Position numbers and translations under genes: made by a program
In this document: piece by piece, positions 14,549 through 18,852 of the stretch
How positions within the stretch are numbered: position 1 is the first letter of the stretch
Layout of the letters: every line of letters starts with the position of its first letter
Assembly (NCBI GenBank): GCA_964057225.1
Contig: OZ059895.1
Coordinates: 18,848,001-18,912,000, forward strand
Source: Auanema rhodensis
Lineage: Eukaryota > Animalia > Nematoda
Length of the DNA stretch: 64,000 nucleotides
Direction of reading: 5' to 3'
Notes under the pieces: model-generated
What the model saw: the letters and a program-made list of their open reading frames with translations, nothing else
Databases searched by the model: none
Told to the model about the DNA's origin: nothing

Positions 14549-14595
<47 letters not shown>
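14549..14595. repeat. (GA)n microsatellite
   Basis: Uninterrupted AG run. Confidence 0.95.
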
Positions 14596-14600
<5 letters not shown>

Positions 14601-15132: not shown

Positions 15133-15752
15133 TTATTGATGCCAATATGCTTGATGTTGAGAAAGAACATGTTGTTGCTGATGATGATGCTGGTGAGTTT
15201 GATACGAATGGCAAAGATATGCTGAAGGTTGATAAGCCATATAGTTTTGGAAATTTTGATGTCCGTTCGATGAATCAATGCTTGGAATTGAAACATTATC
15301 CGAAGAAGTTGATCGAGACAATGGAGGAGTTGAACTAGATGAACGGTTCTCTTCCTCTTCCAACTCAACAATGCGGGCAGAGTATGAATTACGAACCTGA
15401 ATATAAGCGAAAATAGAAAAAATTATAAGAAATATAACTGTACCTGAATTTCTCTTAAAGCTACAGTAGCAAAATCATCATGAAGACCTCCACTTAGTAC
15501 GGAATTAAGATGCTCGATGTATCGGAGAGCAAGACGTAAGGTTTTAATTTTAGGAAGACGATTACCTTTGGGAACACATGATGGTAATTGACTAAAAACA
15601 ATAAAAATTAAAAATAAATAAATAAATGAAATAATAAATTACTTTTGAAGACAATCAAATGCTCTGTTAATATCTAAATTTCTTCTCTTTTCCTTCTCAG
15701 TTGATCGTTGTCTTTTCTTTTCTTGACCAATCACCTTATTCGACTTAACCAT
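15133..15752 (-). CDS. bHLH transcription factor, paralogue A (group A; Mesp/Sage/Hand-like helix 2), ~173 aa
   Basis: Exons 15752-15643, 15591-15444, 15396-15133. KKRQRSTEKEKRRNLDINRAFDCLQNQLP...RLPKIKTLRLALRYIEHL, followed by a Ser-rich and His/Gln-rich tail ending AYWHQ*. Confidence 0.9.
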
Positions 15753-16674
15753 TATAATCTGAAAAATAGATAATTTTAATAATTTTATTAAAATAGTTAC
15801 TAAACAATGTTAGGTGAGAGAACTATACTAAAATGGACTTGTGAAGTCTGATTGAAACATCAGCTGTTCCGCCTTTTACTGTATCTCCACCCCCCTTAGC
15901 TCCGCCCCTTTCTTAAGCTACAGGCAAACTTTGGCTGTAATCTAGAAAATTCAAGTTTTTGAAGTTTTTTTTCAATGATATATACACATTTAGAATAATT
16001 ATTATATTTATAAAAGGAATATAACTTAGAAAAACTAAGATTACCATTGTTTATGAATCAAAGTTTAAAACAATTTCAGTTTCAAATGATATTGCCATTA
16101 AACTTAGTGTAAAACTTGAAATTGATTGAACTATTCAAAAAATTAATAATTTTTGAATTACATTGATATTATCAATTTTCAAATAATTGAATTCGTTTTT
16201 TGTTAAAGTATTCATGATTGTTCACATCTGTTCGGTACAATGTTAGTATGTGGATGAGTGCTAATAGCAATCCAACTTATCGGCTTTCTTGTGAATAAGA
16301 GCCTATTACACGTGGAAGTAACCATAAACGAATATAAGCCGAAATTGCCTCAAGAAACTTGAAATCAATATACAAGATTGTAAATAAGTTTCGGTTAATG
16401 TTTTGATCTTATTTGAACCTAAACTTGTGTGGATGTTTCTTTAATTTTTGGAATAAAAAGTGAGAATTCAGTGAATGCAACCGACTGGCAGACGAATGTC
16501 AGATCAAAATGAAAATTTAAAAATGATACAGAGAAGTGTGAAGACGTATTGTATTCAAGAGAAATGAAAATGAACCAATTTAGCGGTTGTGATAAAGAAC
16601 AGCAGAAGCCGTAGTCAGCTGTTGATCCTTACGTAACGTAAAGAAGAAAAAACCGTCGCATTTTCACCTTTGTC
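15508..16674 (-). repeat. Left arm of 1167-bp inverted repeat
   Basis: Reverse complement of 17422-18588; the only mismatch I found by eye is 16493/17603. Confidence 0.95.
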
Positions 16675-17421
16675 CTTAATATTGTCGGTTAATCAGAGAA
16701 AAAGTAAACAGAAGGTATAGTGAAATAACTATATAAGATTGAAGTTTTAGTGAAAAGATACCGATTTGATTAATCCGTTCGTTTCTCTTTCGTTTTGATG
16801 ATGACGTCATAACATATACATATCTTAAGTATGAGTTTATTTACTTTATTTGTTAATAATAATAACAATATAATTGGATTACCTTTTAAGTATCTTTTTG
16901 ATAATGTTTGCCAAAACAATTACAATAAAAATTTAAAAATATTGAATATAAATTTTATTATAAAAACTGTACTAGAATTTCAAAGTACTGAAAAATTGAA
17001 GACATATTGTAAATCATATGATTAGATAAATAAATAAATAAATAATTTTAAAAAAAAATATATATATGAAGTTATAAATATAATATTATTTAATATATTA
17101 GATAATTATTTTGTAAAATATATTGTATTACCGTATAATATACATATATGAACATGATTTATGAGTTCACTATTCCTATTACCGCTATGTAGTAATGGTA
17201 CGGTGTAAAACCTACCAGGCGTTAAAGTTAGGTTAATACATGGTCACCAGATGTATACTTCATATATTTATAAGATTCTTTTTCTTTATAAGTAAGTACA
17301 ATAATCTTTAATATAAAAGATTCTTAACATTCAAAAGATTAATCATGTAAGAAAAGAATATTTTCAAGTATGTCACATAGCTCTTTATTTTACGTTAATA
17401 GACTAAACTATTAATTTTTGC

Positions 17422-18588
17422 GACAAAGGTGAAAATGCGACGGTTTTTTCTTCTTTACGTTACGTAAGGATCAACAGCTGACTACGGCTTCTGCTGTTCT
17501 TTATCACAACCGCTAAATTGGTTCATTTTCATTTCTCTTGAATACAATACGTCTTCACACTTCTCTGTATCATTTTTAAATTTTCATTTTGATCTGACAT
17601 TCATCTGCCAGTCGGTTGCATTCACTGAATTCTCACTTTTTATTCCAAAAATTAAAGAAACATCCACACAAGTTTAGGTTCAAATAAGATCAAAACATTA
17701 ACCGAAACTTATTTACAATCTTGTATATTGATTTCAAGTTTCTTGAGGCAATTTCGGCTTATATTCGTTTATGGTTACTTCCACGTGTAATAGGCTCTTA
17801 TTCACAAGAAAGCCGATAAGTTGGATTGCTATTAGCACTCATCCACATACTAACATTGTACCGAACAGATGTGAACAATCATGAATACTTTAACAAAAAA
17901 CGAATTCAATTATTTGAAAATTGATAATATCAATGTAATTCAAAAATTATTAATTTTTTGAATAGTTCAATCAATTTCAAGTTTTACACTAAGTTTAATG
18001 GCAATATCATTTGAAACTGAAATTGTTTTAAACTTTGATTCATAAACAATGGTAATCTTAGTTTTTCTAAGTTATATTCCTTTTATAAATATAATAATTA
18101 TTCTAAATGTGTATATATCATTGAAAAAAAACTTCAAAAACTTGAATTTTCTAGATTACAGCCAAAGTTTGCCTGTAGCTTAAGAAAGGGGCGGAGCTAA
18201 GGGGGGTGGAGATACAGTAAAAGGCGGAACAGCTGATGTTTCAATCAGACTTCACAAGTCCATTTTAGTATAGTTCTCTCACCTAACATTGTTTAGTAAC
18301 TATTTTAATAAAATTATTAAAATTATCTATTTTTCAGATTATAATGGTTAAGTCGAATAAGGTGATTGGTCAAGAAAAGAAAAGACAACGATCAACTGAG
18401 AAGGAAAAGAGAAGAAATTTAGATATTAACAGAGCATTTGATTGTCTTCAAAAGTAATTTATTATTTCATTTATTTATTTATTTTTAATTTTTATTGTTT
18501 TTAGTCAATTACCATCATGTGTTCCCAAAGGTAATCGTCTTCCTAAAATTAAAACCTTACGTCTTGCTCTCCGATACATCGAGCATCT
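17422..18588 (+). repeat. Right arm of 1167-bp inverted repeat
   Basis: Mirror of 15508-16674 (coordinates sum to 34096); unique 747-bp spacer 16675-17421. Confidence 0.95.
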
Positions 18589-18852
18589 GAACTCAATCCT
18601 TAATGGTGATCACATTATCCCTTCATCAATGGAGAATCCTAGACCATTGTCGATAGAAGACTTTGCTTCTGTTGCATTACGAGAAATTCAGGTACCAGCT
18701 GAGCACATAATCAAAGACTATTTTCTTATATTCAGATTCGTAATACTTATACAGCACGTATAGCCGAAGTAGAAGATGAGCAGTCCAGCCCCTCATATGA
18801 CAGCCATGCACTGTTTACAGAGTTTTATCATTCTCATTTTTGGCCACAATAA
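18344..18852 (+). CDS. bHLH transcription factor, paralogue B, ~137 aa
   Basis: Exons 18344-18453, 18505-18691, 18736-18852. Same bHLH as paralogue A, then NSILNGDHIIPSSMENPRPLSIEDFASVALREIQ/IRNTYTARIAEVEDE...HFWPQ*. Confidence 0.9.

What the first reader, a model, noticed from the sequence alone, without database searches (positions are those of the whole stretch)
15133..18852. Palindromic bHLH gene pair: identical promoters and DNA-binding domains, old diverged C-termini
Seen: arms 15508-16674 and 17422-18588 are both 1167 bp with one mismatch found. They cover ~920 bp of upstream DNA, exon 1, intron 1 and exon 2 up to the end of helix 2 (..YIEHL). Beyond that the genes are clearly homologous but heavily diverged: a 13-aa indel, DFATVALREIQ vs DFASVALREIQ, VRNSYSARI vs IRNTYTARI, the same intron position, and both ending W-x-Q*. 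Inference: an old inverted duplication with recent arm-to-arm gene conversion. This would keep regulation and DNA binding/dimerisation identical while effector tails differ, giving two co-regulated variants without alternative splicing. A simple recent duplication cannot give this mosaic.
Basis: partly seen in the sequence, partly recalled or inferred. Interest (0 to 1): 0.8.

Follow-up and report, generated by a model that had tools for sequence, protein, structure and literature searches.

The report
Half-homogenised mirror pair of Hand genes
Two head-to-head copies of this roundworm's Hand (hnd-1) developmental gene share a promoter and DNA-binding half that differ by one letter, while their tails diverged long ago; this is a clean but ordinary case of one gene copy overwriting part of its neighbour (gene conversion).

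Summary
Arms 15508-16674 and 17422-18588 are 1167 bp each, with one mismatch (16493/17603), sharp edges and a 747-bp spacer with no arm-to-arm match. They are the only long repeat in the window and occur only twice in the 181-Mb genome, which is probably Auanema rhodense.

The arms carry 922 bp of upstream DNA, exon 1, intron 1 and the first 84 nt of exon 2 of two divergent three-exon genes (left 173 aa, right 137 aa). These are the genome's only Hand/HND-1-type bHLH genes.

Past the outer edge, synonymous sites are saturated (pS 0.82) while pN is 0.18. Both frames, splice sites and the terminal W-x-Q are intact.

Best reading: an old inverted duplication whose 5' 1.17 kb was recently homogenised by interparalog gene conversion. 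The tract runs from the inner end of the duplicated segment to a point 27 nt before a 39-nt indel.

Two additions:
- Only the left gene keeps a further 270 nt or more of distal promoter shared with Auanema sp. JU1783.
- The copies show complementary losses. Left lacks the RPL motif, which all compared nematode HND-1 sequences keep; right lacks the Ser/Pro-rich mid-tail.

The functional idea of co-regulated tail variants is untested. This kind of event is well known in nematodes, so interest is modest.

The parts
15133..15752 (-). Left hnd-1-like gene, 173 aa by the exon model. Exon 1 15752-15643, intron 1 15642-15592, exon 2 15591-15444, intron 2 15443-15397, exon 3 with stop 15396-15133.
   Evidence: Frame translations and GT..AG sites. 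Pfam HLH on exon 2, 24.1 bits. Exon 3 aligns along its length with the tail of the Haemonchus orthologue, E 3e-4.
18344..18852 (+). Right hnd-1-like gene, 137 aa. Exon 1 18344-18453, intron 1 18454-18504, exon 2 18505-18691, intron 2 18692-18735, exon 3 with stop 18736-18852.
   Evidence: Pfam HLH on exon 2, 23.6 bits. Exon 2 is 94% identical to annotated protein P0001, whose exon junctions agree.
15508..16674 (.). Left arm of the near-perfect inverted repeat: 5' part of exon 2, intron 1, exon 1 and 922 bp upstream.
   Evidence: Mirror comparison, 1166/1167 matches. Only two genomic copies.
17422..18588 (.). Right arm of the near-perfect inverted repeat.
16675..17421 (.). Spacer of 747 bp with no arm-to-arm homology, GC 0.22.
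   Evidence: Ungapped and gapped comparisons. No Rfam match and no convincing ORF. GC.
16701..16944 (-). Distal promoter of the left gene only. It is collinear with upstream DNA of the JU1783 orthologue and includes TGACGTCA at 16802-16809.
   Evidence: Local alignment score 84 against shuffles 42 +/- 6 (0/300). The right flank gives z -0.1. Six collinear exact 9-12-mers.
16493..16493 (.). The single arm-to-arm mismatch, partner 17603. In gene orientation it reads CGTCTG on the left and CATCTG on the right.
18614..18652 (+). About 39 nt (13 codons, IIPSSMENPRPLS) present on the right and absent on the left. It starts about 27 nt beyond the outer arm edge, and its exact placement depends on the alignment. 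It contains the RPL motif kept by all compared nematode HND-1 proteins.
18331..18337 (+). TTTTCAG, an acceptor-like site 6 nt before the ATG (mirror copy 15759-15765). It is a likely trans-splice site, inferred from nematode consensus.
   Evidence: Sequence. TTTTTCAG is conserved at the same distance in JU1783.

Best explanation
The locus holds two head-to-head paralogues of the nematode Hand-type bHLH gene hnd-1, made by an old inverted duplication.

One or more interparalog (arm-to-arm) gene conversion events have since overwritten 1167 bp of one copy with the other. The last event was very recent. The overwritten stretch is the proximal 922 bp of promoter, exon 1, intron 1 and the part of exon 2 that completes the bHLH domain.

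The inner edge of the tract is the end of the duplicated segment. The right copy has no ancestral promoter beyond it. The outer edge lies at the last codons of helix 2, 27 nt before a 39-nt indel and saturated divergence. I infer that this heterology stops heteroduplex extension.

As a result, both proteins have the same DNA-binding and dimerisation domain and the same proximal cis-regulatory DNA. Their post-bHLH regions have evolved separately under purifying selection and have lost different ancestral modules.

Shown: the anatomy, the divergence step, family membership, the copy number, and the promoter asymmetry. Inferred: conversion as the mechanism, the indel as the barrier, and any functional consequence.
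For: - The arms have 1 mismatch in 1167 bp with sharp edges.
- The converted coding part has 0/189 differences. The unconverted part has pS 0.82 and pN 0.18 between the copies, and intron 2 has diverged.
- The junction keeps the reading frame, and the tails are homologous with the same intron position.
- There are only two copies of the arm and of the gene in the genome.
- The right tail and JU1783 P0001 share derived states against the left copy and the outgroups. These are NTY vs NSY and the short tail. dN is 0.07 for right-JU, 0.20 for right-left and 0.29 for left-JU. The left tail is collinear with the long strongylid tail. This suggests the duplication predates a species split that is itself saturated at synonymous sites, yet the 5' halves are identical within this genome.
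- The ancestral promoter continues past the arm only on the left.
- Genome size (180.9 Mb) matches the PacBio HiFi and Hi-C germline assembly of the inbred A. rhodense line APS4 described in bioRxiv 10.64898/2026.08.27.747507. This makes a mis-assembled 3-kb structure unlikely.
- Conversion between adjacent inverted paralogues, with tracts up to about 3 kb, is documented in C. elegans (PMC3966223).
Against: - No reads, no second isolate and no close sister genome could be examined, so the arms' identity rests on one assembly.
- The ((right, JU1783), left) grouping rests on one amino-acid site, one length character and dN asymmetry. A post-speciation duplication with a fast-evolving left copy is not excluded.
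- No left-type gene was found in the JU1783 proteome.
- The conversion direction cannot be inferred.
- A tract running exactly to the end of homology is easier to explain by repeated events than by a single one.
- There is no sign of GC-biased conversion in GC3.
Confidence: 0.82

Rival explanations
1. Long-standing concerted evolution with a selectively held boundary. Conversion has kept the promoter and bHLH halves identical continuously since the duplication, while selection for distinct tails (and the indel barrier) has kept conversion out of the 3' halves. The pair would then act as two co-regulated Hand isoforms with different cofactor surfaces.
For: The tract fills the entire homologous region up to the duplication breakpoint and stops at the domain edge. 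Both tails are under purifying selection, with intact ORFs and the terminal W-x-Q. The module losses are complementary: RPL is lost on the left and the mid-tail on the right.
Against: One genome cannot separate one recent event from many. In JU1783 the contig runs unbroken from the promoter into the tail, and no left-type protein is annotated there, so there is no sign of the same palindrome. There are no expression data, and no GC3 shift in the tract.
Confidence: 0.25
2. The mosaic is real but functionally empty. The left copy, which lacks the conserved RPL motif, is a redundant or decaying duplicate, and the recent conversion is a neutral accident of proximity and inverted orientation.
For: Nearly all amino-acid change sits on the left branch (three-taxon branch lengths about 0.21 left and 0 right). 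The left copy has lost a motif kept by every nematode HND-1 sequence compared, from Plectus to Caenorhabditis. Neutral conversion between close inverted paralogues is common in C. elegans.
Against: Synonymous sites are saturated, yet pN is only 0.18-0.24. The 87-codon exon 3 is open, both introns keep GT..AG, and the C-terminal Y-W-H-Q and the long tail collinear with strongylid orthologues are retained. That is not neutral decay over that time span.
Confidence: 0.15
3. Assembly or polishing artefact. Two moderately similar arms were homogenised, or a fold-back chimera was built into the contig.
For: Near-perfect palindromes are a known artefact class, and only one assembly was seen.
Against: The structure has a 747-bp unique spacer, asymmetric outer flanks and frame-exact junctions into two different homologous tails. 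A fold-back chimera would be symmetric and spacerless. The step from 100% to random-level identity cannot be produced by polishing. The probable source assembly is HiFi at about 236x in gene-rich regions, from an inbred line.
Confidence: 0.03
4. Young whole-gene inverted duplication followed by very fast divergence of the 3' halves only.
For: The tails are partly low-complexity (Ser-, His- and Gln-rich) and could change length quickly.
Against: Divergence starts abruptly at third codon positions of well-conserved residues (CTG/CTT, AAC/AAT, TCA/TCC ...) and reaches saturation within 30 nt of the edge. Mutation cannot be that local.
Confidence: 0.01

Closest known systems
C. elegans hsp-16 inverted-repeat modules and other adjacent inverted paralogues that undergo interlocus gene conversion (reviewed in PMC3966223; genome-wide tracts 12-2,958 bp, mean 117 bp)
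   Same: Closely spaced head-to-head paralogues in a rhabditid nematode. They have near-identical arms around a few hundred bp of unique spacer. Identity extends through introns and upstream DNA.
   Different: Here the tract covers only the 5' half of the gene and ends inside an exon at a domain boundary. The 3' halves are saturated at synonymous sites. At 1167 bp the tract is at the long end of the reported range.
C. elegans hlh-17 / hlh-32 (bHLHe22/23 paralogues; PMC11703107)
   Same: Nematode-specific bHLH duplicates whose bHLH-encoding sequences are identical while the rest differs. They are co-expressed and act redundantly.
   Different: Those genes lie within 150 kb of each other and are not described as a palindrome. 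Promoter identity and gene conversion are not reported in that paper. They belong to a different bHLH subfamily.
C. elegans hnd-1 / vertebrate HAND1-HAND2
   Same: The same bHLH subfamily by profile search. The protein is short, with the bHLH near the N-terminus, and the terminal W-P-Q aligns with the start of the HAND C-terminal WPQHVWALELK motif. In C. elegans hnd-1 acts in mesoderm and in somatic gonad precursor fate (PMC9635636).
   Different: The strongylid proteomes searched give one full-length hit per species. Here there are two, with complementary losses in the post-bHLH region. Their function in Auanema is untested.
Arm-to-arm gene conversion in sex-chromosome palindromes (PMC3403216)
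   Same: Inverted arms kept more than 99.9% identical around a unique spacer by intrachromosomal conversion.
   Different: Those arms are 10 kb to Mb long and hold whole genes. This one is 1.2 kb, probably autosomal (not checked), and partial with respect to the gene.

Membership tests
bHLH transcription factors (Pfam PF00010) | HLH domain above the Pfam gathering score | tested here: met
   The domain is split by intron 1. The exon 2 pieces alone score 23.6 and 24.1 bits (cut-off 20.7) for profile positions 23-52. Exon 1 covers positions 1-23 at 13.5 bits. The annotated orthologue P0001 scores 49.6 bits over positions 1-52.
Hand / HND-1 subfamily of group A bHLH | The closest named relatives in a profile search are HND-1/HAND rather than other group A members | tested here: met
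   The profile of the orthologue alignment (A3) finds CRE-HND-1 of C. remanei (E 5e-24). Outside nematodes most named hits are HAND1/HAND2-like proteins, apart from one Fer3-named isoform and some uncharacterised proteins (E 3e-12 to 1e-7).
Hand / HND-1 subfamily of group A bHLH | Conserved HAND C-terminal motif (G-W-P-Q-H-V-W-A-L-E-L-K) | tested here: inconclusive
   Only the first residues are present. The right copy ends FWPQ*, the left YWHQ*, strongylids end YFWSSHP* and Heterorhabditis ends SFWQQ*. MAFFT places them on the WPQ of HAND. The stretch is too short for statistics.
Hand / HND-1 subfamily of group A bHLH | Phylogenetic placement inside the Hand clade against Twist, MyoD, TAL and others | not tested
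   No tree was built. Among solved structures MyoD and Myf5 score best (E 2e-7), then Twist1 and NeuroD1, and no HAND chain was among the ten matches.
Interlocus (ectopic) gene conversion between paralogues | A tract of identity far longer than the flanking divergence allows | tested here: met
   1166/1167 identity, against about 65% identity in coding DNA and random-level identity in non-coding DNA immediately outside.
Interlocus (ectopic) gene conversion between paralogues | Phylogenetic incongruence: paralogues group by species inside the tract and by orthology outside it | tested here: inconclusive
   Inside the tract, left equals right, and both are 27% different from JU1783 in coding DNA. 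Outside it, the right copy groups with JU1783 on one site, one length character and dN. Only one outgroup locus is available and no left-type orthologue was found.
Interlocus (ectopic) gene conversion between paralogues | Identifiable donor and recipient | not testable with these tools
   Both arms are identical. The promoter asymmetry marks the right copy as the truncated duplicate but does not give the direction of the last event.

The most novel reading that the evidence does not exclude
The boundary is not an accident. For a long time, possibly since before the split from Auanema sp. JU1783, conversion has held the promoter and bHLH domain of the two Hand genes identical. Meanwhile the tails evolved apart and divided the ancestral post-bHLH modules between them: the RPL motif is kept on the right and the Ser/Pro-rich tail on the left. 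That would be a genomic equivalent of alternative 3' exons, with a conversion barrier placed at a domain edge.
Probability: 0.2. Interest if true: 0.55.

Novelty: new member of a known kind. Interest (0 to 1): 0.35.

Why it matters
The locus is a very clean natural example of partial gene conversion in a developmental transcription factor. A one-base-sharp step from identity to synonymous saturation falls at the end of the DNA-binding domain, next to an indel that probably acts as the barrier. For people who work on Auanema it flags three things. The single hnd-1 of C. elegans is represented here by two genes that short reads and RNAi or CRISPR reagents aimed at the 5' half cannot tell apart. 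Only 3' exons distinguish the two. The copies have lost different conserved modules, which makes them a convenient natural dissection of the Hand post-bHLH region. It does not reveal a new mechanism.

Tried and rejected
- Residual palindrome in the spacer or beyond the stop codons: sensitive blastn and global alignment found none.
- ncRNA, tRNA-like or extra coding content in the arms or spacer that could explain the conservation: no Rfam match at E<=1, and only short AT-rich ORFs.
- Transposon or dispersed repeat: the arm occurs only twice in 181 Mb.
- Further hnd-1 copies elsewhere in the genome: none.
- An inverted hnd-1 pair as an ancient nematode feature: in C. auriculariae the second, partial copy lies in tandem 5 kb upstream. 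In C. nigoni and C. sp. 36 there is no neighbouring copy within 10 kb.
- GC-biased conversion signature: GC3 is 0.25 in the tract against 0.30 and 0.22 in the tails, so no signal.
- The single mismatch as a conserved regulatory site: the CATCTG/CGTCTG position is not conserved in JU1783.
- Fly-type Inr+DPE reading of the conserved CAGTCGGTT block, a lead from earlier notes: on checking the bases by eye, in neither orientation did I find a box at +28. This was left open.
- The bacterial promoter/terminator scan is irrelevant for a eukaryote and is ignored.
- A left-type orthologue in the JU1783 proteome: not found by two word searches. This is weak negative evidence only.
- Steps left out: the large HMMER representative search, structure prediction and complex prediction were not run, because the family was already settled. 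Exons were searched one by one by reference, and the annotated orthologue P0001 served as the full-length proxy. One search used a stop-free reference holding exon 2 with its intronic flanks and scored exon 2 only. In one search, codon counts were summed over exon pieces read from the window file.
Full report
**1. Observation**

The repeat finder on 13-21 kb reports a single long inverted pair, 15485-16683 / 17413-18611. A base-by-base mirror comparison about the axis (i + j = 34096) shows that the near-perfect part is 15508-16674 against 17422-18588. That is 1167 bp with one mismatch, at 16493/17603. Per 25-nt bin, identity falls from 25/25 to about 10/25 at both edges.

Gapped alignment finds no residual homology in the 747-bp spacer (16675-17421) or beyond the stop codons. 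The arm sequence occurs only at these two places in the 180.9-Mb, 112-contig assembly; the window is C3:18,848,001-18,912,000. It is the only repeat of 150 nt or more in the window.

**2. Genes**

Translation and splice-site inspection give two divergent three-exon genes.

| | Right gene (+), 137 aa | Left gene (-), 173 aa |
|---|---|---|
| Exon 1 | 18344-18453 | 15752-15643 |
| Intron 1 | 18454-18504 | 15642-15592 |
| Exon 2 | 18505-18691 | 15591-15444 |
| Intron 2 | 18692-18735 | 15443-15397 |
| Exon 3 with stop | 18736-18852 | 15396-15133 |

A TTTTCAG acceptor 6 nt before each ATG looks like a trans-splice site. This is an inference from the nematode consensus. The annotated protein P0001 of Auanema sp. 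JU1783 (141 aa) confirms both exon junctions and is 94% identical to the right exon 2.

P0001 served as the full-length proxy. One search used a stop-free reference that holds exon 2 with its intronic flanks, and only exon 2 was scored.

**3. Family**

Pfam HLH is split by intron 1. Exon 1 covers profile positions 1-23 at 13.5 bits. Exon 2 covers positions 23-52 at 23.6 and 24.1 bits, against a cut-off of 20.7. P0001 scores 49.6 bits.

A profile of seven orthologues (A3) finds:
- one full-length orthologue in each strongylid species, plus Heterorhabditis, Diploscapter, ascarids, filariae and Plectus
- 'CRE-HND-1' of C. remanei
- outside nematodes, mostly HAND1/HAND2-like proteins among the named hits

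The terminal FWPQ* (right) and YWHQ* (left) align with the WPQ that opens the HAND C-terminal motif. The stretch is too short to be more than suggestive.

Among solved structures MyoD and Myf5 score best, and I built no tree. I therefore file the genes as Hand/HND-1-type on the profile evidence. C. elegans hnd-1 is the Hand orthologue and acts in the fate of somatic gonad precursors (PMC9635636; PMC11703107). These two genes are the only members in this genome.

**4. The divergence step**

Nei-Gojobori counts were summed over exon pieces read from the window file.
- In the 63 codons inside the arms, left and right show 0 differences.
- In the 38 alignable codons just outside, pS is 0.82 (saturated) and pN is 0.18.

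The change is abrupt. The first codons after ...YIEH already differ at third positions (CTG/CTT, AAC/AAT, TCA/TCC). Intron 2 is diverged and differs in length, 44 against 47 nt.

A young duplication cannot produce this, and mutation cannot be that local. A junction that keeps the frame between two homologous but diverged halves requires homologous exchange. Hence gene conversion, in the broad sense of non-reciprocal homologous copying.

One mismatch in 1167 bp corresponds to roughly 1.4-2.1 x 10^5 generations since the last homogenisation, with a 95% range of about 4 x 10^3 to 1.2 x 10^6. This assumes a C. elegans-like mutation rate of 2-3 x 10^-9 per site per generation. That rate is my assumption and has not been measured in Auanema.

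**5. How old is the duplication?**

The window's species and JU1783 are themselves saturated at synonymous sites (pS 0.92; GC3 0.25 against 0.52). Amino-acid evidence therefore has to decide.
- dN is 0.07 for right-JU1783, 0.20 for right-left and 0.29 for left-JU1783.
- Right and JU1783 share N-T-Y where the left copy and all outgroups have N-S-Y.
- Right and JU1783 both have a short tail (38 and 42 codons in exon 3).
- The left tail (87 codons) is collinear with the long Ser/Pro-rich tail of strongylid orthologues (E 3e-4 against Haemonchus).

This favours ((right, JU1783), left), meaning a duplication older than that species split. It rests on few characters, and I put it at about 65%. No left-type protein is annotated in JU1783. 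The JU1783 contig is only 1877 bp, so its neighbourhood is unknown.

**6. What sets the edges?**

*Inner edge.* Upstream DNA of the JU1783 gene aligns in gene orientation with the left inner flank 16701-16944, which lies beyond the arm. The score is 84 against 42 +/- 6 in 300 shuffles, none of which reached it. Six collinear exact 9-12-mers include ATGACGTCA. The right inner flank gives z = -0.1. The ancestral promoter therefore runs on past the arm only on the left, and the right arm ends at a true breakpoint (17421/17422). The simplest reading is that this breakpoint is the end of the duplicated segment and that conversion has filled the homology right up to it.

*Outer edge.* It lies 27 nt before a 39-nt indel and saturated divergence. 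I infer that this heterology blocks extension. That would also explain why the edge coincides with the end of helix 2, which is the last stretch kept similar by purifying selection.

**7. State of the two copies**

Both have open frames, GT..AG introns and the terminal W-x-Q. With saturated pS, a pN of 0.18-0.24 means purifying selection over most of their history.

They have lost different ancestral modules. The left copy lacks the 13 residues that carry the RPL motif, which every nematode HND-1 sequence compared keeps, from Plectus to Caenorhabditis. The right copy, like JU1783, lacks the Ser/Pro-rich mid-tail. Nearly all amino-acid change sits on the left branch.

**8. Promoter content**

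Neutral sites between the two species are saturated, yet the arms still share collinear blocks with JU1783. Distances are upstream of the ATG.

| Block | Distance |
|---|---|
| CAGTCGGTT | 735 |
| TCTTGAGGCA | 603 |
| AAGTTTGC | 179 |
| AGATACAGTA | 134 |
| AAGGCGGAAC | 123 |
| TTTTTCAG | 14 |

The MAFFT alignment also shows ACGTAAG..AACAGCTG and CACGTG E-box blocks. The arms therefore carry real cis-regulatory candidates in duplicate. The distal left-only blocks sit in the shared 2.6-kb intergenic region and could act on both genes. This is an inference.

**9. Artefact?**

Earlier notes of this scan also call the genome Auanema. I did not verify the identity directly.

A fold-back chimera would have no spacer and would be symmetric. 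Polishing cannot create a step from 100% to random identity. I put the artefact reading at about 3%.

**10. Comparison with the known**

Interlocus conversion between adjacent paralogues, including head-to-head pairs such as the hsp-16 modules, is well documented in C. elegans, with tracts of 12-2,958 bp (PMC3966223). C. elegans hlh-17 and hlh-32 have identical bHLH-encoding sequences, are co-expressed and act redundantly (PMC11703107). Another agent of this scan judged a whole-gene inverted duplicate elsewhere in this genome to be ordinary.

What is particular here is the partial tract ending at a domain edge, the very old tails, the complementary module loss, and the gene concerned: hnd-1 gives one full-length hit per species in the strongylid proteomes searched. 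In the Caenorhabditis species checked, extra copies are not inverted neighbours.

**11. Verdict**

The evolutionary reading is supported. The functional reading is plausible but untested, and 'identical promoters' holds only for the proximal 922 bp. This is a new member of a known kind, of modest interest.

Noticed in passing
window 16701-16944 (minus strand orientation): Distal upstream blocks of the left gene are shared with the JU1783 orthologue despite saturated neutral divergence. They include a perfect TGACGTCA (CRE-type palindrome) at 16802-16809. The right gene has no counterpart.
   Followed up: yes
window 16493 / 17603: The only mismatch between the arms turns CGTCTG (left, gene orientation) into CATCTG (right). 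From memory, both are E-box variants reported for Hand-type dimers. The site is not conserved in JU1783, so this is probably a coincidence.
   Followed up: partly
window 17609-17618 and mirror 16478-16487: CAGTCGGTT(G), about 735 nt upstream of each ATG, is conserved in JU1783. It contains the CGGTTG box that earlier notes of this scan describe as part of a genome-wide promoter-like bipartite element. An ACGTC lies 59 nt upstream of it. Its orientation and role here are unresolved.
   Followed up: partly
L001 (Auanema sp. JU1783 contig, 1877 bp) vs window: The JU1783 orthologue has GC3 of about 0.52, against about 0.25 in this genome, and pS of 0.92. The two 'Auanema' genomes are far apart in sequence and in base composition.
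   Followed up: partly
L004 3616-5203 and 10001-13109 (Caenorhabditis auriculariae): A second, partial hnd-1-like gene (154 aa, no HLH hit on record) lies in tandem about 5 kb upstream of the full hnd-1-like gene. Several other Caenorhabditis species also give two to four hits. hnd-1 may have duplicated repeatedly in rhabditids.
   Followed up: partly
window 14549-14599: A (GA)n microsatellite of about 50 nt lies in the intergenic DNA 3' of the left gene.
   Followed up: no
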